From Phaeosaccion multiseriatum (taxonomy: Eukaryota; Protista; Ochrophyta, other classes), in contig OZ218952.1 in NCBI GenBank assembly GCA_965112735.1, positions 5,394,001-5,458,000 on the forward strand: a DNA stretch of 64,000 nucleotides, written 5' to 3'. Below the pieces are notes generated by a model. That model made no database searches. It was given only the letters and a program-made list of their open reading frames with translations, and was not told the DNA's origin. The translations under genes and the position numbers were made by a program. Numbering within the stretch: the first letter of the stretch is position 1; every line of letters starts with the position of its first letter. Below are positions 195-63,990 of this stretch, in pieces.

Positions 195-500
195 CCCAGA
201 CAGCACACAAATGACGATTACTTTGACGACGTTTGACGACGTTTGACGACGCTTGAGCCCCCTGTTTGACGCTCTTTGACGCTTTTTGACGCCCTTTGAC
301 GCCCTTTGACGCCCTTTGACGCCCTTTTCCGTGAGTTTTTTTTTACGTGATTTTTTTTAGACGAAATTAATAAGGCGAATTAAGATAAAAGGTGCGTCAA
401 AGTGCGTCAAACAGGGCTTTAAAGTGGGTAAAAAGGGGGTTCAAAAGTCGTCAAACGTCGTCAAAGTAATCGTCATTTGGCGTCAAAAGCGTCAAAAGTG
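195..500. repeat. Foldback/subterminal-repeat region, probable DNA transposon end
   Basis: Perfect 33-bp inverted repeat at 208-240 / 447-479 (CAAATGACGATTACTTTGACGACGTTTGACGAC). About ten TTTGACG units on the left are mirrored by CGTCAAA units on the right. Confidence 0.6.
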
Positions 501-7266: not shown

Positions 7267-8647
7267 CACAGGTGCTGGGGCAAGGGGAGATGCACTGCAC
7301 CACCCAAGTAGCAGGCACCCCGCAGTACCTTGATCCTTCCTACATGGAGTCAGGACACTTGACCGAGCAGAGCGACAAGTACTCACTGGGGGTGGTCATG
7401 CTCGAGTTGTTGGAGGGTCAGCTGGCAAGGCCGGGCTTTGTGTTGGCGCAGAGAAGGGCCCTACGAAGGGCGGATCTCCGAGTAGGCATGGGGGATAAGT
7501 TGATTGATTGGCCCGCACGCAAGGCAGAACCCTTTGCGGTGGCGGCCAAGGCGTGCATCCAGAGGTGTGTGGGGGGGGAGTGGGGGGGGGACGTGCGCTG
7601 TGAAGAACCAACTCCTGGACATGACTAGAGTACGCCAATGTGCGTACTCACCCCGACCAGTCCAAAGCCAATGCTTTTTTCTACAACGTCCACTTCCTTC
7701 TTGCCCCCCTTTGCTTGCATGCACCCTCTGGTGCCATCTGGACCCCCTTTGTCTTGTACTGTATCACCAACTGCTGCGCTGTATCACCAACTGCTGTGCC
7801 GTATCACCAACTGCTGCTGTCTCACCACAACTGCTGTGCTGTATCACCAACTGCTGTACTGTCCGAACCCTTTCCGACCGAGCACAGGGACCCCGACAAG
7901 CGACCCGAGCTGGAGCACGTCATCACGTGAGTACCTCCCATTCCCTCCCTCCCTCCCTCTCTCCCTCCTTCGTATCTGCAGTAGACTATCGTAGAATCTG
8001 CGTGGCATGCATATCAGGTAGCGCAGATGGCACCAGAGGGTGTGCACAATAGACTCAGACTTGAACCATGATAAGAGTGGTCCAGAGTCGAACGGAGTCG
8101 AACGGAGTCGAAAAGAGAGAGCTTGTCTGACAAGTGTGTGACGTTTTGTCCCTCGTACTTCATGCTGACGCCCCTCTCATGTCCCCCTCCTCCTGCTCCT
8201 CCCTGTCCTCCCCTACCCTACCCTACAATGGATATCTACAATGGCAGTGAGCTCAAGCGCATCCTGGGCTCCCGTCCCTCCCGCCACGCCCCCCGACGCC
8301 AACGACAGTGCATCGTCTGCTTGGAGCAGCCAAGCACAGCTCGATTTAGGCCCTGCAACTGCCTGCTGTGCTGCGGCCAGTGTGCGAAGCTCATACACCG
8401 CAGAGGGGGAGGACGGGGGGTGGGAGGAGGGGGAGAAGGAGGAGGGGGAATAGGAGGAGGAGGAGGAGGAGGAGGAGGAGGAGGAGGAGGCCGTGGGGGG
8501 TTGTGGGGGGCCGACGCCGACCAGGAGGAGGAGGAGGAGGAGGTGGAGGGGACGGGGGGGGCCCTCTGCCCACTGTGCGACGCGGAGATTCAGGAGGTGC
8601 AGTACGAAGCGGGAGGGGGGGGGGGGGCGTCTCTGAGCCCTGTGTGA
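3054..8647 (+). CDS. Pelle/IRAK-like (RLCK-type) Ser/Thr kinase with N-myristoylation motif, coiled coil and C-terminal RING finger
   Basis: 9 phase-consistent exons: 3054-3512, 3599-4231, 4473-4787, 5102-5286, 5552-5825, 6292-6354, 7272-7564, 7888-7926, 8248-8647. Motifs MGWLKS, FSNEEL, LGSGAFGAVY, VAVK, IIHRDIKAANILLD, ADVGIAR, GTPQYLDP, SDKYSLG, KRP; RING CIVC..PCNCLLCCGQC..CPLC. Confidence 0.9.
6355..7040 (+). repeat. (GTGA)n tetranucleotide microsatellite starting at a 5' splice site
   Basis: ~690 bp of near-perfect GAGT repeats beginning at the GT of kinase intron 6. The same intron ends in (CA)n at 7108-7270, running into the AG acceptor. Confidence 0.95.
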
Positions 8648-14654: not shown

Positions 14655-15469
14655 AGATAGATGGCAGTGGATGGCCTTGATCATTGAAGCTCATTGCAGC
14701 ATCGCAGGCATATGGTCATTGGGTCCTTACGAGGCAGGAGGAGAGAGGCGAGTCTTTAGTGTCCGTGTAACCGCACAAGAGAGCTCAGAGGAGAGGGGGG
14801 CGGCACTTCACTTCATCTCACGTCTCTCTCATTCACCCATTCAGCGGCGGAGAGCAGGGGCAGTGAGCGGCGGCCCGAGGGGGGCAAGGCCGGGAGGGGG
14901 AGGGAGGGGAGGGATGCCTGTTAAGCTCTTCGTCGGAGGTCCTCTCTCGGCCTGTGGTAGCTGAGGGGCAGAGGTGAAGAAATGACCGCACTTGGGCATT
15001 GTATTGGGCATCACAGGCGTGTGTGTCATGTGTAGGGTCAGGGAAGGGGTGCATTGGGCTCTCCTTGCTTTAATCACTGAAGTAAATCAAACTTCGTCCG
15101 GCTCGCTTTCCCTTCATTCCTCAAGGTCTTAAAGCTAACGACGTCGTATACTTCAAGAGCCCTTGCATTCCTCTTCTCGCCTCCTCGGGTCAGACGCGCC
15201 TAACGGTCTTGGCTCTGGCGCGTAGGACGCTCGGCCCTCGGCCGATCTGGTCGGCCTCTAGGCAGGTTCTAGGCAGCCTCTCCGTGACCGCGGGCGCGTG
15301 CGTGGGGCCGCCCAGCCAGTGGTAGCGGCGCACCTGCAGGCATGCACTCCTCGCAGGGCAGCCAGGCGAGGCGGCAAGAGACAACACGAATCAAGTCTAC
15401 TCCTCGCTTTCAATCCCATGCATTGCTTGGTTTAAAGTGACTCTTTGCACTCTGGGCAATGCCACCGTC

Positions 15470-15890
15470 TAGCTAGGCCGCCGCCCTGGGCCGCGGGTCT
15501 ACCAGGCCGTGTTGTAAGCCGGTGCCAGTTGTGATCTGCCCCCGTGGGTACGCGAGCTGCTCATGTACGGCGGCTCCTCTCTCAGAGCTTGGTTTGTATA
15601 AGGACAGAGCGGCCAGCATGATATAGTAGTGGCTGATGTGGTAGGTAGTGCGAGGGAGGAGTGGAGCAGGCAAGCAATCGGGGCCTAGCTAGGCATTGGG
15701 GATGTTGTAAGTCGGTGCATGGCAGGCTTGTTGCTCTCCTTAAACAAACCAAGCTCTGAGAGAGGAGCCACCGTACGTGAGCAGCTCGCGTACCCACCGG
15801 GGGCAGATCACAACTGGTGGTATCGACTTACAACAAGCCTTGCGGCGGCCTCTAGAAATAGGCGGAGGGCCTGGTACGGCCCTCTCTAGC
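15470..15890. mobile_element. Degenerate foldback element (family D)
   Basis: ~100-bp imperfect inverted arms at 15510-15610 and 15733-15835 (TGTTGTAAG...CTTACAACA). 15842-15890 resembles the reverse complement of 549-595, so it is a dispersed repeat. No clean TSD. Confidence 0.55.
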
Positions 15891-15891
15891 T

Positions 15892-18565
15892 TCGGCTCCA
15901 GACTGGCCTAGAAGCCTAGGCCTAGAGACGAAATTCGGCCGGCCTAGGGGGGCCGCAGGCCCCCGGCCTAGGCCTAGAGGGGGGCGCAGATCCCCGGCCT
16001 AGGCCTATTTTTGGCGCAGCCCCCCCGGCCTAGGCCTATCGACCCTGGACAAGATTACGGTGTGCCGGCCGTAATCAGAATCAGATGATCTTGTGTCCAG
16101 GGTCGACTCCCTCCCTCCCTCCCTCCCTCCCTCCCTCCCTCCCTCCCTCCCTCCCTCCCTCCCTCGCTCCCTCCCTCCCTCCCTCCCTCCCTCCCTCCCT
16201 CCCTCCCTCCCTCCCTCCCTCCCTCCCTCCCTCCCTCCCTCCCTCCCTCCCTCCCTCCCTCCCTCCCTCCATCCCTCCCTCCATCCCTCCCTCCCTCCCT
16301 CCCTCCCTCCCTCCATCCATCCATCCATCCTTCCCTCCCACCCTCCCTGCCTCCCTCCCTCCCTACCTCCCGCTTTCTATCCCTGCCTGCCTCCCTCCCT
16401 CCCTCCCTCCCTCCCTCCCTCCCTCCCTCCCTCCCTCCCTCCCTCCCTCCCTCCCTCCCTCCCTCCATCCCTCCCTCCATCCCTCCCTCCCTCCCTCCCT
16501 CCCTCCCTCCATCCATCCATCCATCCTTCCCTCCCACCCTCCCTGCCTCCCTCCCTCCCTACCTCCCGCTTTCTATCCCTGCCTGCCTCCCTCCCTCCCT
16601 CCCTCCCTCCCGCTTTCTATCCCTCCCTGCCTCCCTCCCTCCTTCCCTCCCTACCTCCCTGCCTCCCTCCCTCCCTCCCTCCCTCCCTCCCTCCCTCCCT
16701 CCCTCCCTCCCTCCCTCCCTCCCTCCCTCCCTCCCTCCCTCCCTCCCTCCCTCCCTCCATCCTTCCCTCCCACCCTCCCTGCCTCCCTCTCGGCTTCAGA
16801 CTGGCCTAGAAGCCTATGCTCTAGGCCCTAGGCCGAGCGGCCTACGCCCGCTCTAGGCCTAGGCCGGCGGCCGTTGGCCGCTCTAGGCCGGCCATTTTCT
16901 CTCCCTAGGCCGGCGGTTCTAGGCCTAGGCCTCGACCTATCTGATTAGTAATTACCGCCGGCGCAGCCGGCCTGATTACTGAATATGACCGGCGCCAGCC
17001 GGCCTGAGTACTGATTATGCGCCAACCGGGGGCTGATTACTGATTACGGCCGGCGCACACCGTAATCTTGTCCAGGGTCGAAGGGAGGGAGGGAGGGAGG
17101 GAGGGAGGAAGGAAGGGAGGGAGGGAGGGAGGGAGGGAGGGAGGGAGGGAGGGAGGGAGGGAGGGAGGGAGGGAGGGAGGGAGGGAGGGAGGGAGGGAGG
17201 GAGGGAGGGAGGGAGGGAGGGAGGGAGGGAGGGAGGGAGGGAGGGAGGGAGGGAGGGAGGGAGGGAGGGAGGGAGGGAGGGAGGGAGGGAGGGAGGGAGG
17301 GAGGGAGGGAGGGAGGGAGGGAGGGAGGGAGGGAGGGAGGGAGGGAGGGAGGGAGGGAGGGAGGGAGGGAGGGAGGGAGGGAGGGAGGGAGGGAGGGAGG
17401 GAGGGAGGGAGGGAGGGAGGGAGGGAGGGAGGGAGGGAGGGAGGGAGGGAGGGAGGGAGGGAGGGAGGGAGGGAGGGAGGGAGGGAGGGAGGGAGGGAGG
17501 GAGGGAGGGAGGGAGGGAGGGAGGGAGGGAGGGAGGGAGGGAGGGAGGGAGGGAGGGAGGGAGGGAGGGAGGGAGGGAGGGAGGGAGGGAAGGAGGGAGG
17601 GAAGGAGGGAGGGAGGAGGGAGGGAGGGAGGGAGGGAGGGAGGGAGGGAGGGAGGGAGGGAGGGAGGGAGCAGCCGGCCTGTTTACTGATTATGACCGGC
17701 GCCAGCCGGTCTGGTTGCTTACAGCCGGTGACCAGCCGGCCTGATTACTGATTTTGCGCCGGCCGGGGGCTGATTACCGGTTACGGCCGGCGCACACCGT
17801 AATCTTGTCCAGGGTCCTAGGCCGGGAGGGCTGCGCCCAAAATAGGCCTAGGCCGGGGACCTGCGGCCCCCCTAGGCCGGCCGAATTTCGTCTCTAGAGG
17901 CCTAGGCTTCTAGGCCAGTCTGGAGCCGATCCCTCCCTCCCTCCCTCCCGCTTTCTATCCCTGCCAACCTCCCTCCCTCCCTCCCTCCCTCCCGCTTTCT
18001 ATCCCTCCCTGCCTCCCTCCCTCCTTCCCTCCCTACCTCCCTGCCTCCCTGCCTCCCTCCCTCCCTCCCTCCCTCCCCACCTCCCTCCCTCCCTCCCTCC
18101 CTGCCTGCCTGCCTGCCTCCCACCCTCCCTCCCTGCCTCCCTCCCTCCCTGCCTCCCTCCCTCCCTGCCTCCCACCCTCCCTCCCTCCCTCCCTCCCTCC
18201 CTCCCTCCCTCCCTCCATCCATCCATCCCTCCCTCCATCCATCCCTCCCTCCGTCCCTCCCTCCCTCCCTCCCTCCCTCCCTCCCTCCATCCCTCCATCC
18301 CTCCCTCCCACCCTCCCTCCCTCCGTCCCTCCCTCCCTCCCTCCCTCCCTCCGTCCCTCCCTCCCTCCCTCCCTCCGTCCCTCCGTCCCTCCCTCCCTCC
18401 CTCCATCCCTCCCTCCCACCCTCCCTGCCTCCCTCCCTGCCTCCCTCCCTCCCTCCCTCCCTCCCTCCCTCCCACCCTCGCTGCCTCCCTCCCTGCCTCC
18501 CTCCCTCCCTCCCTCCCTCCCTCCGTCTCCCTCCCTCCCTCCCTCCCCTCCCTTTGACCCTGTTG
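15892..18565 (+). mobile_element. Family-B composite element, copy 1 (older, interrupted, right arm missing)
   Basis: Starts TCGGCTCCAGACTGGCCTAGAAGCC as at 63004. Contains an internally deleted family-C MITE (16039-16106) and degenerate (CCCT)n at 16107-18553, split by copy 2. A TTGACCCTG remnant of the second C is at 18554. Confidence 0.8.
16790..17929 (-). mobile_element. Family-B composite element, copy 2, inserted into the microsatellite of copy 1
   Basis: TIRs TCGGCTTCAGACTGGCCTAGAAGCCT / AGGCTTCTAGGCCAGTCTGGAGCCGA. TSD TCCCTC at 16784-16789 and 17930-17935. Reverse-complement match to 63004-63990, with (AGGG)n at 17082-17668. Confidence 0.9.
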
Positions 18566-19084
18566 TCGACCCCTGACACACTATCGCCCACATTCTCGAT
18601 AGCGCGCTATTGGCCGCGGCCGATAGCGGATAGCGTGCCGGCTGGCGCCGGCCGATAGCGGATAGCGCGCCGGCTGGCGCCGGCCGATAGCGGATAGCGC
18701 GCCGGCTGGCGCCGGCGATAGCGGATAGCGTGCCGGCTGCGCCGGCGATAGCGGATAGTGTGTCAGTCGACCCCTGACACACTATCCGCTATCCGCTATC
18801 GCCGGCGCCAGCCGGCGCGCTATCCGCTATCGCCGGCGCAGCCGGCACGCTATCCGCTATCGCCGGCGCCAGCCGGCGCGCTATCCGCTATCGGCCGGCG
18901 CCAGCCGGCGCGCTATCCGCTATCGGCCGGCGCCAGCCGGCACGCTATCCGCTATCGGCCGGCGCCAGCCGGCGCGCTATCCGCTATCGCCGGCGCCAGC
19001 CGGCACGCTATCCGCTGGGGGGGCCGATAGCGCGCTATCGAGAATGTGGGCGATAGTGTGTCAGGGGTCGATGTCAGGGGTCGA
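18566..19084. mobile_element. Family-A MITE, outer copy
   Basis: TIR TCGACCCCTGACACACTATC / GATAGTGTGTCAGGGGTCGA (right TIR split by the inner copy). TSD CTGTTG at 18560-18565 and 19085-19090. Internal GATAGCG and GCCGGC subrepeats. Confidence 0.9.
18767..19071. mobile_element. Family-A MITE, inner copy in opposite orientation
   Basis: Complete TIRs; TSD TGTCAG at 18761-18766 and 19072-19077, i.e. inserted inside the right TIR of the outer copy. Confidence 0.9.
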
Positions 19085-25452: not shown

Positions 25453-26295
25453 TTAAAACATTCCCTCATTATAATTTCCACTAGGGTTAGCTTCGGGGGG
25501 CGGCGCGAACAAGGCGGTCGTGACGATGACGCACACCTGCTCTATGAAGCAGTCCAGCGACGCTGCCTCTCTCCGTGCAAAGGTCATCCACTCTCTCTCC
25601 GTGAGCCGTCTGCTAGCACTACAATTACTGCCACTACTAATACTACTACTACTATTCCTGCTGCTGCTACTGCTACTGCTGCCTTTCCCGCTGCTACTAC
25701 TCCCACCACCTCTTCCCTTTGAGTCTTTCGATGTACTGGAAGCAGTCCCTGCCCCCCCCCGGGGCCCTGCTGCAGACAGAAACTGACATTGCGCTGCCCC
25801 GGCGCACGCCATTGCCTCTAGCAGCGGCCCCACCTCCCCCAGGGGGTCCTCCGAGGCGGGCGCGTGTGTGGGTGCGGGCGTGTCCGTATGCTTCTCGCCC
25901 TGCTGCGGGGCCTTCTCCACTGGAGGGGGCTGCTGCTGCTGCTGCTCCTGCTGCTGCTGCTGCTCCTCCTCCTGCTGCTCCTCCTCCTGCTGCTGCTGCT
26001 GCTTTATCACCAACGGCTGCTGCTGTTGCCGTAGCTGCATGGCTGCTGCCTGGGTCTGGGCAGTGGCGGTGAGGGCGCTGTTATCGACGGCCACCATGTC
26101 CATCACAAGAGCCTTCAGATCAGCACCCGAGGCTCCTGAGTCCTGGCCGCCGCTACCCCCACCACTGTACATTGTGAATACGACTGTGGAGGGTGGGGGA
26201 AGAGGGGAGGGCGAGGGGCAGGGGGCAGGCAGGCGGCGCGGGTCGAGTCAGCAACGCAAGGCAGAAGGCATGGAAGGAGGAAGAAGACAATACTA

Positions 26296-26326
<31 letters not shown>

Positions 26327-27159
26327 CTGTGTGTGCGTCCGCCACTTCACTTACATCCCAGACGGGCCTGTTTGCTTGATACATTTCCGAGTGCGACGAA
26401 GGCGACGACATACTCCTGAGAGAAGAGACAGAGAGGTGTTCAGTCGAGGCACAATCTTGTGAGCTCGGAAGAGAGAGGGACTACTCCTCCTCACCTCTTC
26501 CGAACCTCTCCTACCACCACTTCCTCCCCTCCTCTCCCTCCGGGGCGCAAATAGCTTAAGGCCTTAGCTTAGACTAGTTCACACACGAGTCTGTAAGGAG
26601 TAGACCAATACCGCTCCTATAACTTTCTTCACTCTCCCGTTTATGCATAGTTTTGTTGCAAAGAGGGAGGACTAGATACGAAACCTCCATATTTTAAAAA
26701 GAACAGTCCCGATGGCTGCAAGGCTCTTGCACGCACCTCGTAGTCTACAGCTCCGTCTCCGTCGAGGTCGAGTGCGGAAAACACACGGGCTTTGACCTCG
26801 GCATCCCTTTGGCTGCTGCTGCCGAAGGCCCCGTGTCCGAGGCAGAGCGCCAGAAAGGCTTCTCGGGGCAGAACAAGCGCCGCATCCTCCTTGGTGTCCT
26901 CCTTGGTGATGGCCTTAACACTGAGAGGGGAAGCGGCAGCTGGAGGAGAGGCGACCCCTCCCTCCCCAGTGGTCTGCCCCGCTTCTGCGACGACGGGCAC
27001 CAGCCCCTCCAGCTTCAGGAAGCGACTACGCAGCCCCTTTTCTGCTTCCGAACCTAGAGCCTCCTTCGATGCCTTAAAGAGTGCCGCTTTCCTCGAGATC
27101 TCACTGTCTCCAATCCCACCGCCTGCTGCTGCACCACTGCTACTGCTGCTATTCCCCAT
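25453..27159 (-). CDS. N-myristoylated EF-hand protein (calcineurin-B/NCS-like, with low-complexity insertions)
   Basis: MGNSSS start at 27159; exons 27159-26737, 26415-26355, 26183-25453 are phase-consistent. Canonical EF loop VFSALDLDGDGAVDYEEYV, then ARLGFVFTMY. Confidence 0.7.
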
Positions 27160-27277
27160 CAAGGAAGAAAGTAGTGGAAGTCTCACGTGGAGCACCAACC
27201 GTTGAAGAAAAGAAGCGGCCACAACATAGATGGCACTTAACGGTTACAATATACAACTATCGACGAAAAAAGCTAAA
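27160..27277. promoter_or_regulatory. Compact bidirectional promoter/5'UTR region
   Basis: Only 118 nt separate the divergent ATGs of the EF-hand and aquaporin genes; locally A/T-richer. Inferred from position only. Confidence 0.5.
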
Positions 27278-30274
27278 ATGGCGTATGGTTTGGGCACGAG
27301 GTTCATCTCTGAGATGCTGGCTATGGGTGTTGTGATTTACATCGGGGATAGTGTCATCTCTAACGAGGTGCTGCCGCGCACGAAGGGCCACAACTTAGGT
27401 ACACCCGTTACCCTTTTCTTCTCTCCCCTCTCTCCCCTCTCAGTCCACTCTAACTAACATCTTTTTCTTGGCTCCCACACGTCTCAGGGCTTGGATTCGT
27501 GGCTATTTGCTTTGGAATGGTGAGTTTGGTCCTGCAGGCACATTTCGGTTCATCAGCCAATTTGAAGAGATGGTGTACGCTTTTTGATTGATCCAAGGGA
27601 CAAGGCCTTGGAAGCAGCAAGTGCTGTCTACTCGTGCTCAACCCTCCTCCAATCCCTCCCTCTCAGGCCTTCTTCATCCCCATCTCAATGTTTGGACATA
27701 TATCCGCCACCGTGAACCCCGCGATGCTACTGGCGAAGGCCTTCACCGGCAAATTGCCCTGGAAGGATGCACTTGCGCTAATGGTCGCGGACTTCATCGG
27801 TAAGTAAGGAGAGAGAGAGGGAGAGAGACTCGGCTTCCAGAGACCTCTGGCTGAATTACTAGTTGTTCTCAACTAAGACACAAAGGCTATGAAGCTATAG
27901 CGCCTGACTCCTTCCCGACTCATCTAGGCGCCTTCCTCGGGGCTATCATGGTGTACTTGCACCACATCTGCCACTTCAGCATCGTGCCCGAGGCCCCTTC
28001 TCCCCCCCGTTGGGCGGACCGCTTCACCAGCGCGGCAGGCCGCAAAGCCATCACTTCGGACACCAGGTACAAATGTAAATGATCGGAGATGGAGCAAATG
28101 CAATACTCGCGATCTGACATCCGCTCGCCCGCCCCCCCCCCCTCCCTCGCCTCCCTCTGTTCCTCGCCCTCACTCTCTCCCACCGGCCCATCCACCCAGA
28201 GACGCCTTCATCTCCGCAGACCCCGCCAGCTGTGTGGTGCCATCCCCAACTCTCTCTCCTGGCGAGCGCCGCGGGGGTGTAAAGCGTCTGAAGGCAGTCC
28301 TGCAGCTGCGGTGGCGCCCCCGGGTTTCTTTGCGACGTCGCAGAGAAGGAGGAGGAGCAGCAGGAGGAGAAGGACGTGGCTCGTCCGCTGGTAAGCCATC
28401 TGAGATAGCAGCAGAAGAGGGGGCGGCAGCAGCAGGAGGAGGAGGCGGAGGAGGAGGAGGAGGAGGAGGAGGAGGAGGAGGAGAAGCAGTGGGAGTGGCA
28501 GGGGGGCGACGCGGATTGGAGATGCGCAAGGTGTGCTCCATGATGAGTATGGCAGTGGATGGCAAGAGCCGACTCGACGACAGCACGCACAGTATACAGG
28601 TGAGAGTAGCGAGGGAGGAGGGAAGAAGGGTGAATGTGTACGCGCCCGTCTCCCTCCACCCTCCATCCACCCTCTCCCCTGCCCCCTCCCTCCCTCCCTC
28701 GTTCCCTCCCTCCCTTCTTCTACCCTCCTTGTCCTGACACCGAGGAGCGCAGGTGGCGTCTCTCCTGCACGAGCACGACAAACTCCGTGACGACGATTAC
28801 CTAAGGCTCGAGGCCCTGCAGGAGGCACCCAACGCCTTGAGAGGGCCACTTCTGGAGCTGTGTCTGCCTCGGGCCCGGCCCGCACCAGACCTACTCTATG
28901 GGGGTGGAGGAGACGGCGACAATGACGATGGTGAGTGAGTGAGTGCGTGAGGGAGTGAGTGAAGGAGTGAAAGAGTGAGGGAGGGAGTGAGGGAGTGAGT
29001 GAGTGAGTGAGTGAGTTAATGGTGCAGTGATTGATTGAGTGAGTGAGGGAGGGAAGGAGGGAGTGAGTGAGTTAGTGAGTGGATGAGTGCAAAGGGTGGA
29101 AAAGAGGGTGGAGTAAGGGCTGCGTGGGGAGAGAGAGAGAAGGGGAGGGGGGGGTGCGGAAGGAGAAGGACCACAGCGGGCAGGGTGGCGAACGAAACTG
29201 ATGGGACTAGGATCACGTGTTGGTTATCCAGTGGTCGAGCGCGTGGGCCTCTACGAAACTTGAGCTGCGTGCGATGGCTCGACTGTGCGTGCGTCGGCTT
29301 GTTTGCCATCGTTCTTGTCTTACCTGTCTTATCTGTCTATTGGTTGGTTGGTTGGTTGGGTGGTTGGTTGGTTGGCTGGCTGGCTCTTCTCTCTCTCCCT
29401 GCTGACACAAACCAGGCAAGCCGCACGAGGGGGGGGATCAGGCGTATAATGAACTCGTAGAAGCCTACAGAGGACGCATCCTCGCAGACCAAAACGCCAA
29501 ACTCACCTGCTTCTGCACCCGCCCGGCCATCTACGCCCCGCCCTTCAACTTTGTAAGTCATCAGACGCACGCACGCACACTCAACCTCTTACCCTCTGAC
29601 CCTCTGACCCTCTAACTAACCTCTCTGATCGTCTCTTCTTCCTCACTGTTTATCGCCTCTTCTTACTCACTGAGCCTTTGATCCTCCTACTATTTAACCT
29701 CTGATATCACCTTCTGTAACCGACCTTTCACCTTCGAACCTCTGAGACTGTGACCCTCTGACCTCTTGTCCCCCTGACTTCTCTCTCATATCTCTCCTTA
29801 ATCTCTGAAACTTTGAACGAACGTCCTCAGCTCACGGAGGTACTGGGCACTTTCCTGCTCCTGTGGGCCGCACTAATGCTGGAGGAGAGGAAGGTTATCG
29901 GAGCAGGGGACGACACAGGCGCGGTGATAGACTTGCTCGAGCCGCTGCTCATCGGCTTCCTCGTCGTCGGCTTGGTCATGGCACATGCCGGTGAGGGAGG
30001 GAGGGAGTGGGTGGGGGGGTGGAGGGTGGGTGGGTTGAGTGAGTGAGTGAGTGAGTGAGAGAGTGAGCGAGTGAGCGAGCGAGTGAGTGAGTGAGTGAGT
30101 GAGTGAGTGAGTGAGTGAGTGAGTGAGTGAGTGAGTGAGTGAGTGAGTGAGTGAGTGAGTGAATGACTGAGCTCGAGCAGGGCGGGATTTGCTTCTCTGC
30201 GGCGCCTCGCCCTGCTGACCACTCTCTTGTACACACACATACACACACTCACACACACATGCACACGCACACAC

Positions 30275-30317
<43 letters not shown>

Positions 30318-31339
30318 CACGCACACGCACGCACACGCACGCCTACTGTCATAGGCCCCACTGGATACGCCGCCAACCCGGCGCGTGACATGGGCCCCCG
30401 ACTGGCGCACTTCTTTCTCCCTATACCCAACAAGGGCGGTTCAGAGTTCTACTACTCATGTGAGTGTGAGGGGGTGTGGCTCAGGAGCCGAGTCAGAACG
30501 CAGGGGTCGGTGTGAGGGAGACAGGCAGGCAGGAGCAACGATGCAGGGGTTGTGAGGCACGAATGCGCAAGAGCGAGGGCGCGGTCTGACAAGGCACGGA
30601 AGCGAGGCGCTCTGTCCTATGTGTGCTCCAACCTTCGTTGCCGTCACGCTGCTGGCCTCCCTCCCTCCTCACCTCTCACTCTCTCTCTCCTCTCTCACTT
30701 CCTCCCCACTCAACTCACTCACTCACTCTCTCTCTCGCACTTCCCCCCCCACTCAACTCACTCACTCACTCTCTCTCTCTCGCGCTTCCCCCCCCACTCA
30801 ACTCACTCACTCACTCTCCCTCTCACTTCCTCCCCACTCAACTCACTCACTCACTCACTCTCTCTCTCGCACTTCCCCCCCCACTCAACTCACTCACTCA
30901 CTCTCTCTCTCGCACTCCCCCCCCCACTCAACTCACTCACTCACTCTCCCTCTCACTTCCTCCCCACTCAACTCACTCACTCACTCACTCTCTCTCGCAC
31001 TTCCCCCCCCACTCAACTCACTCACTCACTCTCCCTCTCACTTCCTCCCCACTCAACTAACTCACTCACTCTCCCTCTCAATTCCTCCCCACTCAACTCA
31101 CTCACTCACTCACCCACTCTCTCTATTCATCTCTGTCTCCCTCTCCTTGTTGATCCACCTCTCCGCCCCCCCCCCCCCCCCACCTTACTCTCTCTCATCC
31201 TCATCCTCCAGGGGTGCCCTTCTTTGGCCCCTACATGGGGGGCTTCCTTGCAAGTCTTGCCTTCCAAGGCTGCAGACTGATGAATCACTACCCCGACAGT
31301 AGCTACGTCAGCAGGTCGTTCGGCGGAAGCTGGAACTGA
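27278..31339 (+). CDS. GlpF-like aquaglyceroporin (GIP-type MIP) with very long loop C
   Basis: 10 exons: 27278-27398, 27488-27519, 27667-27799, 27928-28067, 28200-28599, 28753-28931, 29416-29552, 29831-29990, 30355-30458, 31212-31339. Motifs [67 protein letters not shown]. Confidence 0.93.
30670..31125 (+). repeat. Compound minisatellite in last aquaporin intron
   Basis: About ten ~40-bp units of CACTTCC(T/C)CCCCACTCAACTCACTCACTCACTCTC..., with variants recurring in order. Confidence 0.8.
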
Positions 31340-31728
31340 GTACTCATCGTCTCGGCCTCTTCCATGTTTTGTACATTGTAGAGGTCCTCTACACAGAGTG
31401 TAGACATCACCCGACCCCACACCATGCCCATAATGTCATGTCCGATGGCGTGGTGGCGGATCGGAAACGGACTCTTGTGTGACTCTTGCCTTTCAGAGCG
31501 TTTGTCTGCGGCGGTGAACCGAACAATTCTTGTTGATGTTCGACGCTAATAGTGTTTGTTGCACATTCTTCAATTAAAGTGCCACGCACTAATGGAAGTG
31601 GGGAAAAAGCGAACTAAACAAAGAAGTTGGAGCCAATAACCTCCTTCCATCCTAATCCTACGCAAGGAGCCTTTCCACCTCTACCTTGTACCACAACGTT
31701 TTGAGTCGAGAAACACTCAACCTTGGCT

Positions 31729-32127
31729 GGGGGGAGGGGGCCTCGGCCGGGCACGAACGATGCTGAGCGAAGTGGCAGATATGGCTGGTGCAACCAGGTA
31801 CACCATGATGCCCCGAGGAAGCAAGGCGCCTAGCTAGATGCGTCGTATCATTCATTGGAATGGAGTCAGAGGCGCTATAGCTTCATAGCCTTCATGTCTT
31901 AGCAATACTGAAACCAGAGGCCTCTGGCTGGAAGCCCAGTCCAAGTGGCTGAGTGCAGACTTGCTCGTCTCTCCTCTCTCTCTCTCTCCTTACCGATGAA
32001 GTCCGCGACCATGAGCGCCAGTGCATCCCTCGAGCGAGGCAATTTGCCGGTGAAGACCTTCGCCAGTAGCTAGACATCGTGCGTGGCGGACATGTGTCAA
32101 AACATTGAGCGAGATGGGGATGAAGAA
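31729..32127 (-). pseudogene. Inverted, decayed partial duplicate of the aquaglyceroporin gene (exon 3 - intron 3 - exon 4)
   Basis: Reverse complement aligns to 27670-28008, including intron sequence (AAGGCTATGAAGCTATAGCGCC). NPA codons deleted; many frameshifting insertions. Confidence 0.92.
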
Positions 32128-33063
32128 CCAAGTTCGCGTCGTGACCCTCACGTAGTACAGATGTCGCCAACACGTTCACATTTAGCACGTACAATTCAGT
32201 GCGATTCATTGACAGATGCATCGAGAGCAGCTACCACTTTCGCTTGGCAGAAGCGGGCACCCCATCCCACCGCCCAAGCGTCCGTCCTACAGGCGTGCGG
32301 CCAGCGGTGCCTGGCAAGCTGCTGCAGCACAGAATCACTGGCACTTCATTCTCCGCCTCCGCCTCGGCCTCGGCGATCAAAGAGTAAACACCTCCGGAGC
32401 TCTCCCTGCCTCGCTCGCTGTGTCTCGGTCGCTGTGCACCGCAGGCAGTCAGGCAGGGGCGCCTCTGCGCCGAAGACCTCGTCCCTGTGGGAGGGGGTGG
32501 GCGGGGCGGATACCCTTCTCACCCCTGCCACACACACTACAACGCCCCGCTCCAGGCAATGCTCGGAGCGCGCTCGAGCATAGTCCACACGGCAGAAGGG
32601 GCGGGGAACGGGCGAAGGGGGGGGGTTGCGTTCGAAGTTGGAGCCTGCAGAACCTGACCAAGAGGCCGTGGAGCCCCGCCCCGCCTGACTTATTGCTGAG
32701 CTGAGAGCTGAGCTGAGTGGTGAGCCGGGCCGAGGCCGAGCGGTGTGCCCAAGTGGGCCTGGCCCCGTCTGTCCTTCTGCGGCAAGGACTGCGGCAAGTG
32801 GGGGACCCCATCTTTCACTCCTGCGTTTTAATTCCACCCGTCGCCAGTGTGTGTGTGTGTGCGTCCCGAGGAGAAGAGAAGGAAGCGACAGGGTGCTGCT
32901 GCCACACGCAAAGGTTTTGGTGGTTGATGACTATCGGTCGGACCTTGGTGTGGAGACAGAGATGGAGGAGGATGGATGCTCCCTCCTCTCTGTGCGTGTC
33001 CCGCAGTGTGGAGAGGGCTCAGCGGACGCGCGTCAGCAGCAGCAGTTGGTGATACACACTTCC

Positions 33064-34286
33064 TCAGCAGTAGTCATAATCGCTGCTGGCTTGGGGCTTT
33101 GGGGCTGCCGGCTGAGAGGCATCCTTGAGTAACTGCTGCATGCCCTCTTCGAAAGAGCCGTCGCACCCCCCGCGGGGCTCCATGGCGCCTGCAAGAGGGA
33201 GGGAAGGAGGGGGATGGAAGGAAGGAAGGAAGGTGGGGCAGAGGGAAAGAGCGTGGGGCGGGTATTGCTGTGGGTTGGGGGGAGTAGCAAGTACCGAGTC
33301 GGCTCCACAACGCTTGCCTTCCGTACTGTTCAGATTGGAGGAGAGGTGCTGCTCTCCATGTGAGACGATGGTCAGGTGTAACGCAGCAACGCAACACATA
33401 CATCCTCTACTCATGGGAACGGTAAAATCGACGTATGAAATCGACGTATAGACCATAGGGTGGAAAGGAAAGGATACACAGGACACGCCAACACCCCCCT
33501 CCATTCCCTCTGCTTCTTACCATTGCCCCACTTGATTGCGACGCAGGGGCCAAGTCCACACATGCCGAGGCAGTCCGAGCTCTCCACACTCACAGCAGGA
33601 CTGCTGCTGCCTTCCAGCGCAGCCGAGCCGTCCTTCAGAGCCCGCATGGTCATTGCCGCTCCCTGCTGCAGGCAATCCACCTCCATACACACCAGAAGAC
33701 TACTGCTCTCCTGCTGCTTGGCAGCCACTACCTTGGGCTTCTTCTTCTTCTGTGGGGGCTTTGCCTTTGCCTTCAGTGCTGGCGGTGGCGTTGCAGCACC
33801 TCCTTTCTTAGCTTTTTTGCTGCTTGACGCTGCCGCCATTTTGGATTTCTTTCTGCTCGCCTTCATGGCCACCAGCGATTGCGCCCTCCGAGCTCGGGGG
33901 CCCAGTGCATTGGGCGTGGCGGGCAGCATAGGCCTGCCCCCTCCTCCTTGCACAATCGTCGAACTGAGAAAGCCTCGTGCAGGCTACCGATGGGCGCGAC
34001 ATCAAAAGGCAAAGGACACAAGTCTGTGAGTGTTAAGCGAAGGAGGGTGAAGAAGAAGGCGTGGTGGGGAGAGGTGGATGGTCGACGGAGGCGTCGTCGT
34101 TGGTAGGTGGGAGAGTGGCCAGGTGGGGATATGCGGCCCAGGAATGAGCGGTGAGCGTGCAAAAGTGTGGAGGGAGACAGCAGAGTGTCGAGAGAACCGT
34201 AAAGGGCCCAGCAAGGAATAGCCGAAGTTCGTTTTCACCTGTGAGGTCGCAAACATCAAGATCGCGGTCACGGAGAGAGACAACAT
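33064..34286 (-). CDS. Thioredoxin-like [2Fe-2S] ferredoxin-domain protein, probably plastid-targeted; 3' end uncertain
   Basis: Exon 34286-34239 (MLSLSVTAILMFATSQ) splices in phase to 33983-33521 (PARG-FLSS..., Lys-rich stretch, LVCMEVDC...SDCLGMCGLGPCV = Cx4C/Cx3C ligands). Last exons unresolved. Confidence 0.7.
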
Positions 34287-34492
34287 CCTGCTACCTCCTG
34301 CTACGACACCTAGTCTCGCTACTTCGACAAGCAAAGCGACCAAAGAGGAAGGAATAAGAGGGAGGGAAAGAAGGAAGGAAAAACCTTTAAGTGCCATCCG
34401 GGTAGGAGCCACGCACGCGTTCACAGATGGCAGAATTCTTCTCTTTTTTTTCTTTTCTCCTTTCTCCTCTATAAGCTTGTCTTGTAGAGGGG

Positions 34493-35877
34493 ATGGGGGC
34501 AGGAACGACAGCCACGAAGGCGATGGCTCATGTCCTTCTCCTGGCCGCCAGTTCCCGGCTGCCCGTCGGCTCGAGGGCCCTCGTTCAGACCTTCTTTTGC
34601 TCTGCTTGTGGCGCCGTGTCGAGGAAACAGCAGCAGCGAGGGCATGTCCAAAGCCTGCAGAGCAGCAGTACCGACCCCGTGCCTTGCAGCTTGAGCGGCA
34701 TTAGCAGCAGCTATAGCAGAGGGAGGGTTAAATGTCACCTTGGGAGGGGAGGAGGCGTTGTCCGCGGTCGCCCAAGCAGCAGCTTCTGTAACAATGGGGA
34801 CGCTGTTTGCAGCTCGGGCGGCAGCAATCATAGTTTCAGCAGCAGCAGTGCCGGGGGTAGCGGTGTCTCACTCGAGACAAGGTCATCTTCGGGGAAAGTA
34901 CCACCGGGAGAGAAGGAGAGGGGGAGCGAGAGCATGAGCCCGGGGGGGCGCCTTCCCACTCTCTTCGACTTTAGCTTCTATCTCGGAGATGAACCAACCT
35001 CACGTGAGCCAATAGCAGGAGGAGCAGGAACGTCCTTACCAAGCGAACAGGGGGAAGTCGCGGCAAGATGTGTAGCTGTGCGCATGCCGACAGATGGGGA
35101 AGGCCGCGCGGCTGCAGAGGCCGAGCTCCTGGAGGAAGAGGTGCGCTACTGCGCCTCCCTTCACCCTCGACGACAGGTAAAGGAAACCAATATCAACTCT
35201 GTGTGCTTTGGTAGCAATAGCACCTATAGATCCAGCCATGTGTTCACCTAGCTGTGCCGCTTAGTCCTTGGGTCACTCAACTCTCTCCGCTCCCCCCCCC
35301 CCTGCAGGCTACTTTCCTGGGTGGGCGGGTAGCTCTCCTCCGGGCCTTGACTCTGCTTCACACCCCGCTGGACTCGGACTCGAGCACACCCCACGAGAGC
35401 AGTAAGGACGCAGGCAGCGTCCACTCTCCCTCTCTTCCCCTCGGCCCCTACGAACGCCCACCCCCATTCGGCCCGGAGCTGCTGCTCCCACCCATTCTGA
35501 AAACCGCCTGCGGTGCCCCCGTGCTGCCCCCCACCCTGCACGGGAGCATCAGCCACAAGAATGACGTGGCCGTGGCCATCGCCTGGCAGAGCGGCAGCAG
35601 CAGTAGAGACGCCCCGCCTCACCATCTCGTCGGGGTCGATTTGGAGAGTATCAATGTGCAGCGCAAGGCCGGCTTGGAGAGGCGCATCCTCACCAAGAGC
35701 GAGGTGGAGGAGTGGGACTCACGGCGGTTACAGAGCCTCACCGCTGCAGAGGAGCTGTTGGTGCGCTTCTCAGCCAAGGAGGCCCTCTACAAGGCGCTCC
35801 ACCCCGTGTTGGGAAGGACCATTGACTTCCAGGAGGCCCAGGTTACGCCTCGAGACCCACCGAGTAGTAGCAACAGA

Positions 35878-51872: not shown

Positions 51873-51972
51873 TAGACCCCTGACGTGACGCACTATCGCC
51901 CATTCTCGATAGCGGATAGCGGATCGGCTGGCGCCGGCGATAGCGGATAGCGGATAGTGCGTCAGGGGTCGA
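51873..51972. mobile_element. Short solo family-A MITE (100 bp)
   Basis: TAGACCCCTGACG(TGACG)CACTATCGCCCA ... GATAGTGCGTCAGGGGTCGA, homologous to 18566-19084. TSD imperfect at best (ATGGTA/ATAGTA). Confidence 0.8.
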
Positions 51973-61759: not shown

Positions 61760-63003
61760 TGATGTGATGGGAAAAGAAAGAGCCCTGTATCGTAGTGTAG
61801 GGGAGGGGAGGACGCAGGGCAGAGATCCACTTGCGCTGCTCTTGTCCCTGTCTCTTCTCCCCCTCGTCTTTCTTGCTGCGCGACGACGTAGCAGTGGAGA
61901 GCGTGAAGAGGAGGAGGATGAGCACTGGCTGCTGTGCCTGCCAATCACGTCGACCCGGAAGCAGAGGGTCGGATTTCCTCCAAGAGAGAGAGGCAGGGAA
62001 ACGCATTTGTTGTGGGGAGGCAGCAGCCTCCCGCCCCTCCTCCCTCCCCTGCCTGCCTGCCTCTGCAGTCAGTAACCATCTCGCCCTCCGATGTCAGAGG
62101 TGGCCTCTGCCGGTGTGCCACAGAGACGTGGCTCGCTCCACTCTGTGCCACTCTGTGGCACTCTGTGGGGTTGACTGGCATGGCCTCGACGAAAAGAAAC
62201 AAGACATGCTTGAGTGCTTGGCGCCAACCCCTTTCTTCTTGACTTCGAGGGGTCGTCCCCGGCTCCACACTGGACGTGATGTTGATCTACTCTTTGCCAA
62301 GTCGTCGGTATGCGGGGCGGGCTATACCGCGACACAATCGCTCTGCTCACAGCCCGGAGAGGGGGAGAGAGGGATGCATCCCTATCTACTGCAATGTGGC
62401 CGATGTCAGCAGTAGACGGAGCCTAGACCTGGAGGGAGACATGCATAGATGTACGTACGATGGTGACCAGTGTGCGGGAGGGAAGTGTGCAGGGGAAAGG
62501 AGTGAAAAAGGCCATGCGCAGAAACGCGAACGACTTCCCGGCCGCATGAAGCTGTGCGAAGTTTGAGGAGGGTGTGTTGGACCATGTGACACACACGTAG
62601 GCGCGCTCCCAACCGGGAAGCGCCCCACATCTCCACGTGTAGGGCGTGCCTTGTGACCCCGAGTGCCCCTGCCTGCGTGCAGAGAGACAGGCGACAATGC
62701 GCGAAAGGGTTCCCGGTGTTAAATTTTGGGGTCTACACATTTGGGTATGGGTGTATCAGAGCATGAGAAAGACACCTAGGCGCTCTCCTAAATGATTTTT
62801 GCCCCCAGCGCTTTCTGAAGAGGAGGTATGCAGGTCTGCACACTTTGGAACACGGAAACCAACATGGCCAAACGGTTTCGTGCGACGGTGTTCCCGGTGT
62901 TTGTAACGTCTGGGCATTGGACATTTGGGTGATTAGACCCTCGACCCCTGACACGCTATCGCCCACTTTCTTGATAGCGCGCTGGCTGGCGCCGGCTCAG
63001 GGG

Positions 63004-63990
63004 TCGGCTCCAGACTGGCCTAGAAGCCTAGGCCTAGAGACGAAATTCGGCCGGCCTAGGGGGGCCGCAGGTCCCCGGCCTAGGCCTAGAGGGGGCCGCA
63101 GGTCCCCGGCCTAGGCCTATTTTTGGCGCAGCCCCCCCGGCCTAGCTAGGCCTATCGACCCTGGACAAGATTACGGTGTGCGCCGGCCGTAACCAGTAAT
63201 CAGCCCCCGGCCGGCGCAAAATCAGTAATCAGGCCGGCTGGTCACCGGCTGTAAGCAACCAGACCGGCTGGCGCCGGTCATAATCAGTAATCAGGCCGGC
63301 TGCGCCGGCCGTAATCAGAATCAGATGATCTTGTCCAGGGTTGACTCCCTCCCTCCCTCCCTCCCTCCCTCCCTCCCTCCCTCCTTCCCTCCCTCCCTCC
63401 CTCCCTCCGTCCCTCCCTCCTTCCCTCCCTCCCTCCTTCCCTCCCTCCCTCCTTCCCTCCCTCCCTCCCTCCCTCCCTCCCTCCCTCCCTCCCTCCCTCC
63501 CTCCCTCCCTCCCTCCCTCCCTCCCTCCCTCCCTCCCTCCCTCCCTCCCTCCCTCCCTCCCTCCCTCCCTCCCTCCCTCCCTCCCTCCCTCCCTCCCTCC
63601 CTCCCTCCCTCCCTCCCTCCCTCCCTCCCTCCCTCCCTCCCTCGCTCCCTCCCTCCCTCCCTCGCTCCCTCCCTCCCTCCCTCCCTCCCTCCCTCCCTTC
63701 GACCCTGGACAAGATTACGGTGTACGCCGGCCGTAATCAGTAATCAGCCCCCGGCTGGCGCATAATCAGTACTCAGGCCGGCTGGCGCCGGTCATAATCA
63801 GTAATCAGGCCGGCTGCGCCGGCCGTAATTACTAATCAGATAGGTCGAGGCCTAGGCCTAGAACCGCCGGCCTAGGGAGAAAAAATGGCCGGCCTAGAGC
63901 GGCCAACGGCCGCCGGCCTAGGCCTAGAGCGGGCGTAGGCCGCTCGGCCTAGGGCCTAGAGCATAGGCTTGTAGGCCAGTCTGGAGCCGA
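63004..63990 (+). mobile_element. Family-B composite element, copy 3 (complete)
   Basis: TIRs TCGGCTCCAGACTGGCCTAGAAGCCTA / TAGGCTTGTAGGCCAGTCTGGAGCCGA. TSD CAGGGG at 62998-63003 and 63991-63996. Confidence 0.93.
63155..63848 (+). mobile_element. Family-C composite: MITE - (CCCT)n - MITE
   Basis: C1 63155-63344 and C2 63699-63848 both start TCGACCCTGGACAAGATTACGG and flank (CCCT)n at 63345-63698. One TSD, GGCCTA (63149-63154, 63849-63854), brackets the whole unit. Confidence 0.9.

What the first reader, a model, noticed from the sequence alone, without database searches (positions are those of the whole stretch)
31729..32127. Pseudogene decayed by stereotyped +4-nt insertions (XYZ -> XYZ-G-XYZ): candidate undescribed mutational process
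Seen: against its parent (27670-28008) the copy has nine insertions of exactly 4 nt: ctc[gctc], cca[gcca]g, cta[gcta]g, ctt[gctt], tac[ctgg]ttg, cca[gcca], ttc[gctc], tcgt[tcgt], ccg[gccg]. Seven fall within 70 bp of parent (27921-27990), which otherwise shows only about one substitution and one 1-bp deletion. Eight can be written as a 3-bp duplication with a G spacer (two imperfectly). The parent frame is intact, so the exonic events are gains in the copy. The same +4 event separates TE copies (CCTAGCTAGG at 63141 vs CCTAGG at 16029). Established: neutral decay is usually dominated by substitutions and 1-bp or deletion events. Inference: a dedicated process, such as excision footprints of a 3-bp-TSD transposon, staggered-nick repair, or duplicate-targeted mutagenesis analogous to RIP but by insertion. 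It could also seed the many tetranucleotide microsatellites here (GAGT, CCCT, CTAT, CTGT, GATG, GCAA).
Basis: partly seen in the sequence, partly recalled or inferred. Interest (0 to 1): 0.85.

Follow-up and report, generated by a model that had tools for sequence, protein, structure and literature searches.

The report
Four-base scars riddling a dead gene
A broken, flipped copy of part of an algal water-channel gene carries eleven near-identical four-letter insertions (two letters repeated around a fixed 'GC'), which look like scars of a cut-and-paste enzyme, but no matching jumping gene or published process was found.

Summary
The better grammar is ab -> ab-GC-ab (2-bp duplication around a fixed GC), not a 3-bp duplication plus G. 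Nine of 11 fit perfectly (chance about 1e-14). It is not an assembly artefact: read-derived contigs match, and a second isolate shares 8 events and carries the perfect form of one 'imperfect' event. New here: the sites follow a one-sided context 5'-YRYC^Y (49/55 matches; CTAG is a typical site), all on one strand (P about 0.02-0.08). The motif re-finds a second cluster at 15313-15691, and timing looks burst-like. Best reading (0.45): excision footprints of a cut-and-paste element with a 2-bp target duplication and G...C ends, like Tc1's +4 footprint; no such element is in the window. Close rival (0.35): a host cut-and-rejoin mutator of dead duplicated DNA. Top2 duplications, C-to-T RIP and microsatellite seeding are not supported. 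The scan noted the same signature before on other pieces of this genome (unchecked AI notes). Ten literature searches found no description.

The parts
27278..31339 (+). Parent gene: intron-rich aquaporin/MIP with two NPA motifs and intact frames; exons 27667-27799 and 27928-about 28066 plus intron 27800-27927 are the source of the copy
   Evidence: Exon translations. Pfam MIP hits on two exons searched separately, E = 0.0085 and 0.08, both below the curated cut-off
31729..32127 (-). Inverted, intron-retaining partial copy of parent 27670-28007, 389 bp downstream of the parent stop codon; 24 substitutions, one nonsense codon, many frameshifts
32107..32112 (-). Event 1: c-TC-gc-TC-a
32067..32072 (-). 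Event 2: c-TA-gc-TA-c (net +5 with one extra base)
32032..32037 (-). Event 3: c-TC-gc-TC-g (net +3 with one base lost)
31925..31930 (-). Event 4: c-CA-gc-CA-g, in the copied intron
   Evidence: shared by the second isolate
31831..31836 (-). Event 5: c-TA-gc-TA-g, at the copied splice acceptor
   Evidence: shared by the second isolate
31819..31824 (-). Event 6: c-TT-gc-TT-c
31791..31796 (-). Event 7: c-TG-gt-TG-c here, c-TG-gc-TG-c in the second isolate
   Evidence: Variant 31793 A>G in run X5 restores the perfect form
31782..31787 (-). Event 8: c-CA-gc-CA
31765..31770 (-). Event 9: t-TC-gc-TC-a, the one site without an upstream C; separates the 2-bp from the 3-bp grammar
31753..31758 (-). Event 10: c-GT-tc-GT-g; either a later G>T in the spacer or a plain 4-bp tandem duplication
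   Evidence: second-isolate allele not shown in the truncated table
31744..31749 (-). Event 11: c-CG-gc-CG-a
31869..31872 (-). Pure 2-bp duplication (c-CT-CT-g), the spacer-less form of the scar
31846..31862 (-). About 11-nt insertion that is an inverted (snap-back) copy of its flank, a break-repair type scar
   Evidence: Alignment; hairpin z = -2.3
31941..31966 (-). 25-26-nt insertion in the copied intron with short inverted ends; origin unknown
   Evidence: folding no better than shuffles
31669..31714 (.). Short multi-copy repeat abutting the copy, probably the end of a mobile element; another genomic copy has TAGC put in behind 31688
   Evidence: At least five other contigs lie on it, summed depth about 12 times the flank; single in the window
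63143..63148 (+). Same event (c-TA-gc-TA-g) in one copy of a young MITE; absent from the copy at 16029
15313..15691 (.). Second cluster of candidate events (15313, 15359, 15470, 15686) next to and inside a decayed fold-back repeat; no parent available, so inferred from motif only
   Evidence: 4 of 14 ab-GC-ab hexamers have the perfect YRYCY context against a 3% background, P = 7e-4; scan-corrected P = 0.004

Best explanation
The insertions are insertion-and-excision footprints of a cut-and-paste (DDE-type) DNA transposon not yet identified. Inferred steps: (1) the enzyme attacks a site like 5'-YRYC^YN with a 2-nt stagger, so gap filling duplicates the two central bases; (2) the element's ends begin with G (or GC) and end with C; (3) on excision the non-transferred strand is cut 1-2 nt inside each end, so terminal bases stay on the flanks; (4) end joining gives ab-GC-ab. 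With GC...GC ends the 2-nt overhangs are self-complementary, which would make the scar unusually uniform; trimming gives the pure +2 form. Events pile up in silenced or dead duplicated DNA and are purged from, or not aimed at, working genes. Shown: the grammar, the site context, polarity, reality and sharing between isolates. Inferred: every enzymatic step and the element itself.
For: Constant GC between two copies of a variable dinucleotide in 9 of 11 events, 10 with the second isolate's allele. This is the geometry of Tc1 footprints, +4 bp in 78% of excisions (10.1101/2022.08.01.502254), and of ISY100, whose self-complementary 2-nt overhangs religate to TA-TA-TA (PMC2170065). Pre-event 4-mers match CTAG in 25 of 44 positions against 11 expected (P = 1.5e-5; best of 16 palindromes). 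Pure +2 duplications and snap-back inserts in the same copy point to double-strand breaks. The region is rich in DNA transposons.
Against: No intact element with G...C ends and a 2-bp duplication in 64 kb. The MITEs present have TCG...CGA ends and 6-bp duplications. Only 2 of 11 duplicated dinucleotides in the copy are TA, whereas Tc1/mariner/IS630 use TA almost exclusively. Density is extreme: 11 in 338 bp, 7 in 70 bp. The context is one-sided (49/55 left, 31/55 right) and all sites face the same way (P about 0.02-0.08), while a transposase dimer should give a symmetric or randomly oriented profile.
Confidence: 0.45

Rival explanations
1. A host mutator acting on dead or silenced duplicated DNA with no mobile-element intermediate. 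An enzyme nicks or cuts 3' of the C in YRYC^Y with a 2-nt 5' overhang (Spo11/Topo VI-like geometry, or a domesticated transposase). The ends are filled, each gains one G, and they are joined, giving ab-GC-ab. It works in bursts along one strand: a frameshifting analogue of RIP.
For: One-sided motif and same-strand orientation of the sites. Eight events shared by both isolates and none private despite 1.8% divergence, P = 0.005-0.14 under a steady clock depending on branch length. Confinement to dead DNA. No donor element. Yeast Spo11 cuts with a 2-nt 5' overhang and prefers C just upstream of the cut and A at -4/-5 (10.1101/2024.11.20.624382); A is the commonest base at -4 here (5 of 11).
Against: No known enzyme adds a fixed GC. 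Non-templated addition is normally variable (own knowledge). Strand coordination is marginal and rests on one locus; the second cluster has both orientations. The parent shows no demonstrable hit: the one candidate in its intron (27848) is not improved by collapsing it. No candidate gene was identified.
Confidence: 0.35
2. Footprints of a 3-bp-duplication element (CACTA/EnSpm-like) that excises through flank hairpins; the G is a palindromic (P) nucleotide complementary to the first C of the right-hand duplication.
For: 10 of 11 sites have C directly upstream, so C-ab-G-C-ab describes them equally well.
Against: Event 9 needs extra substitutions. The repeat variant at 31688 has G upstream (tentative). 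P nucleotides from the other flank (complement of the last base) are not seen where they would differ from G. Hairpin footprints are normally heterogeneous (own knowledge). No CACTA-type ends noticed in the window.
Confidence: 0.1
3. Ordinary 4-bp tandem duplications (trapped Top2 with fill-in and NHEJ, or slippage) later blurred by substitution.
For: Trapped Top2 yields 2-4-bp de novo duplications (PMC8795545). Events 3, 4, 5 and 10 read as perfect 4-bp duplications.
Against: Seven of 11 are not perfect duplications and all deviate to the same G|C junction. Only 23% of perfect duplications in this sequence would read as ab-GC-ab. Background substitution is only about 8%.
Confidence: 0.04
4. 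Assembly or sequencing artefact, or inheritance from a closer source locus that already held the insertions.
For: The same-sample runs may be the source of the assembly and are contigs, not raw reads. The whole genome could not be searched for a closer source.
Against: An independent isolate from another study carries 8 events with its own substitutions and a parent-like contig lacking them. A closer source would only move the process to another locus.
Confidence: 0.02

Closest known systems
Tc1/Tc3 and IS630-family (ISY100) excision footprints
   Same: 2-bp target duplication plus two element-derived bases, net +4, highly stereotyped.
   Different: Those duplicate TA almost exclusively and leave CA/TG or TA. 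Here the dinucleotide varies (TC, TA, CA, TT, TG, GT, CG), the spacer is GC, the context is one-sided, density reaches one per 10 bp, and no element is seen.
Trapped-Top2 duplication signature (ID17 / ID_TOP2alpha)
   Same: Recurrent de novo 2-4-bp gains from staggered cuts and NHEJ, with a one-sided context motif despite a dimeric enzyme.
   Different: Top2 products are exact duplications; here the junction is always G|C whatever the template.
Spo11 / Topo VI cleavage
   Same: 2-nt 5' overhang; yeast Spo11 prefers C just upstream of the cut.
   Different: No +4 scar or fixed GC addition is described; mouse SPO11 disfavours CNTANG-type sites; no link to a gene was tested here.
RIP in fungi and localized TpA hypermutation in Bigelowiella natans (10.64898/2026.01.13.699255)
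   Same: Clustered mutation of duplicated or foreign DNA with a fixed sequence context (for Bigelowiella; RIP from own knowledge).
   Different: Both work by base substitution. Here there is no transition bias and the product is a frameshifting insertion.
PIF/Harbinger-IS5 group (PHIS), including ISL2EU
   Same: G...C ends and 2-3-bp duplications are typical of the group (own knowledge); an earlier scan note reports a Harbinger-type element in this genome.
   Different: That element is noted with an AWT duplication; no PHIS element matching YRYC^Y and a variable 2-bp duplication was found.

Membership tests
Tc1/mariner/IS630 footprint | 2-bp target duplication with two element-derived bases between (+4) | tested here: met
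   9 of 11 perfect, 10 with the second isolate
Tc1/mariner/IS630 footprint | Duplicated dinucleotide is TA | tested here: not met
   TA in 2 of 11 events in the copy; CTAG is only a consensus
Tc1/mariner/IS630 footprint | Donor element whose terminal bases equal the spacer, with a DD(E/D) transposase | tested here: inconclusive
CACTA/EnSpm or hAT hairpin footprint | 3-bp (or longer) duplication with P nucleotides from either flank | tested here: not met
   Spacer is G regardless of the last base; event 9 lacks the upstream C
P-like TCG-ended MITEs of this window | Scar keeps a 6-7-bp duplication and TCG/CGA end bases | tested here: not met
   6-bp duplications flank 18767-19071 and 63004-63990; the scars have 2 bp and GC
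Top2-type duplication (ID17) | Exact 2-4-bp tandem duplication | tested here: not met
   7 of 11 are inexact, all towards G|C
RIP / deaminase hypermutation | Excess C-to-T transitions in a fixed context | tested here: not met
   4 C>T and 2 G>A of 24 substitutions
RIP / deaminase hypermutation | Targeting of duplicated DNA, both copies hit | tested here: inconclusive
   Enriched in dead repeats; parent intron 0 clear events against 2 in the copied intron, too few
Spo11/Topo VI scar | 2-nt stagger 3' of a preferred C | tested here: inconclusive
   Geometry and the C at -2 fit yeast Spo11 but cannot identify an enzyme
Spo11/Topo VI scar | Dependence on the enzyme and on end joining | not testable with these tools
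   Needs mutants or cleavage mapping

The most novel reading that the evidence does not exclude
This ochrophyte-like alga has a host-controlled genome-defence mutator that knocks out duplicated or silenced DNA by writing frameshifting ab-GC-ab insertions at YRYC^Y sites in strand-coordinated bursts, an insertion-based counterpart of RIP with undescribed chemistry.
Probability: 0.3. Interest if true: 0.92.

Novelty: new variant of a known kind. Interest (0 to 1): 0.72.

Why it matters
If these are footprints, they reveal a transposon with a target rule and end sequence not matched by any family I could check, active enough to be the main cause of pseudogene decay in this alga. If they are made by the host, they are a new class of mutational signature and possibly a new genome-defence system that guarantees frameshifts. 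Either way the signature is exact (ab-GC-ab after YRYC), can be scored genome-wide from sequence alone, and gives a direct handle for finding the enzyme.

Tried and rejected
A same-strand alignment was meaningless because the copy is inverted. Window-wide there is no special excess of GC as spacer among ab-XY-ab hexamers (observed/expected 1.36 against 1.2-1.6 for other spacers), so the signal is local. A self-BLAST, also after collapsing all ab-GC-ab hexamers, found no further gene/pseudogene pair. Two searches for intact elements with G...C ends and 2-bp duplications found none. More DNA of this organism could not be fetched: a MITE end pattern and a protein query found nothing in metagenome contigs, the exact-protein look-up was blank, and homolog searches gave only distant relatives (32-44% identity at the top), so the species is unidentified. 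No RNA run holds the stretch, so read-through and hairpin RNA are untested. No Rfam family in 26000-34000. Microsatellite seeding, RIP-type transitions, Top2 duplication, P-like MITE footprints and artefact were each tested and rejected. A 10-bp periodicity is absent: spacings in the dense cluster are 8, 25, 5, 13, 8 and 5 bp (read). Ten literature searches found no description of this scar; the library lacks most subscription papers.

Full report
Setting. The window is GC-rich (53-69%), microsatellite-laden eukaryotic DNA. Earlier scan notes mostly call the organism an ochrophyte alga with about 22 pieces; I could not name it, because its proteins have only distant relatives in the databases. 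The parent is an intron-rich aquaporin/MIP gene at about 27278-31339 (+), with both NPA motifs in open frames and weak Pfam MIP hits on two exons searched separately. The spliced protein was not joined or searched. The flagged stretch is an inverted copy of parent 27670-28007 (one exon, the next intron, part of the next exon) 389 bp past the parent's stop. It keeps the intron, so it is a DNA-level duplication. It abuts a 46-bp sequence (31669-31714) on which several other contigs lie, probably a mobile-element end.

The observation. All nine listed insertions are there, and two more are hidden by adjacent 1-bp changes. Nine of the 11 read exactly as ab-GC-ab. A random 4-nt insertion does so with probability 0.017, so P = 7e-15. 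The rest of the divergence is 24 substitutions with no transition bias, a few deletions, one pure +2 duplication and two longer inserts, one a snap-back copy of its flank. The parent frames are intact, so exonic events are gains in the copy.

Reality and age. Contigs of two runs from the same sample span 31685-35800 without a difference. These may be the assembly's own source, so the stronger test is run X5, another sample and study: one contig covers 31669-31945 with no gaps and 5 substitutions, so 8 events are shared. Its variant at 31793 turns the 'imperfect' event 7 into a perfect c-TG-gc-TG, as the grammar predicts. A parent-like X5 contig lacks the events at 31993-32127. With 1.8% divergence between isolates and no private event, a steady clock has P = 0.005-0.14 depending on the branch length assumed, which hints at a burst before the isolates split. 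The same event in one young MITE copy (63143) shows that the process also acted recently.

Grammar. Event 9 (t-TC-gc-TC-a) fits only the second without extra change. Another genomic copy of the adjoining repeat has TAGC inserted behind a G (tentative). Seven of 11 events are not exact 4-bp duplications and all deviate to a G|C junction, which excludes simple duplication.

Site preference. Pre-event 4-mers match CTAG in 25 of 44 positions (11 expected, P = 1.5e-5), but the match is lopsided. On the copy's minus strand positions -5 to -1 read Y (10/11), R (9/11), Y (10/11), C (10/11), Y (10/11); the mirror side is near background, 49 against 31 of 55. No uniform random set reached that information content in 1500 trials. 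That all sites face one way has P of about 0.02-0.08 under several null models: suggestive only. The motif was derived post hoc, so I tested it elsewhere. Among 551 ab-GC-ab hexamers in the window 26 have the perfect context, and outside the copy the only tight cluster is 15313, 15359, 15470 and 15686 beside a decayed fold-back (scan-corrected P = 0.004). That cluster has both orientations and no parent for confirmation.

Where it acts. The copy is the top hotspot of a reference-free scan and 15260-15700 the second. CTAG sites are converted at 3 of 8 in these two old dead segments and 0 of 48 outside them and the MITE clusters. Window-wide GC is not favoured as a spacer. Whether homology, silencing or only lack of selection explains this is open; the parent intron has no clear event. 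Tetranucleotide arrays are not explained: 16 of 156 contain GC.

Mechanism. A variable dinucleotide duplicated around two constant bases is the shape of a Tc1-type footprint. Tc1 leaves +4 bp in 78% of excisions (10.1101/2022.08.01.502254), and ISY100's 2-nt self-complementary overhangs religate to TA-TA-TA (PMC2170065). An element with G...C or GC...GC ends and a 2-nt target stagger would give ab-GC-ab. I rank this first (0.45). It fails family membership because TA is not required, and no such element is in the window; the MITEs here have TCG ends and 6-bp duplications. The density, one-sided context, common orientation and burst-like timing fit a host enzyme better (0.35): a cut 3' of C with a 2-nt 5' overhang, as yeast Spo11 makes (10.1101/2024.11.20.624382), fill-in, one G added per end, and joining. 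No enzyme with that fixed addition is known to me. A 3-bp hairpin footprint (0.10), Top2-type duplication (PMC8795545; 0.04) and artefact (0.02) are less likely.

Novelty. Ten literature searches found nothing describing this scar; the nearest algal case is substitution-based hypermutation of viral inserts in Bigelowiella. Four earlier scan notes report the same or a similar signature on other pieces of this genome. They are unchecked AI notes and I do not count them as support. What this report adds is the second-isolate test, the YRYC^Y context, the orientation bias and a second cluster.

Verdict. A real, highly non-random mutational signature of unresolved origin. It works like a transposon footprint, is not a member of any footprint family tested, and has about a 30% chance of being a new host defence mutator. 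Interest 0.72.

Noticed in passing
window 18767-19071 and 63004-63990 (also 15892-17929, 18566-19084, 51907-51972, 62941-63003): Nested MITEs with TCG...CGA ends, subterminal repeat arrays and 6-bp target duplications; some carry long CCCT/AGGG arrays inside.
   Followed up: partly
window 14659-60711 (24 places, e.g. 21622, 23283, 54453, 60711): A dispersed 16-nt word GGATGGCAGTGGATGG (up to 2 mismatches) on both strands, mostly in G-rich simple sequence, once in an ORF.
   Followed up: no
window 5296, 7773-7853, 33043, 36179, 44968, 47273 and others: 18 copies of the dispersed word CAGTTGGTGATACA (up to 2 mismatches), usually inside CAG runs; a tandem array of it at 7755-7862 lies between inverted repeats at 7722 and 8042.
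   Followed up: partly
window 14126, 14717, 25309, 41433, 47867, 56300, 56343: A third dispersed word, GCCCATATGCCTGC, seven copies.
   Followed up: no
window 15468-15856: Decayed fold-back element with diverged arms; one end and an internal site carry CTAGCTAG.
   Followed up: partly
window 208-479: Inverted repeat with 10-bp internal tandem units and an AT-rich centre, probably a small transposon.
   Followed up: no
window 17894-17903 and about 17815-17822: A third copy of the MITE has a pure +2 duplication at one CTAG site and a 7-bp deletion starting at the same CTAG that carries the +4 scar in the 63143 copy, suggesting different repairs at one hot site.
   Followed up: partly
window 31669-31945: In the second isolate the contig carrying the copy has depth 15 against 44 for the flank and 74 for the parent-like contig, and 31946-35700 is covered only by short or parent-derived pieces; this may mean presence/absence variation, but that run is incomplete.
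   Followed up: no
window 27667-28007 and 31729-32127: Parent and copy form a 4-kb-spaced inverted repeat just past the stop codon; read-through would give hairpin RNA. No RNA run was available.
   Followed up: no
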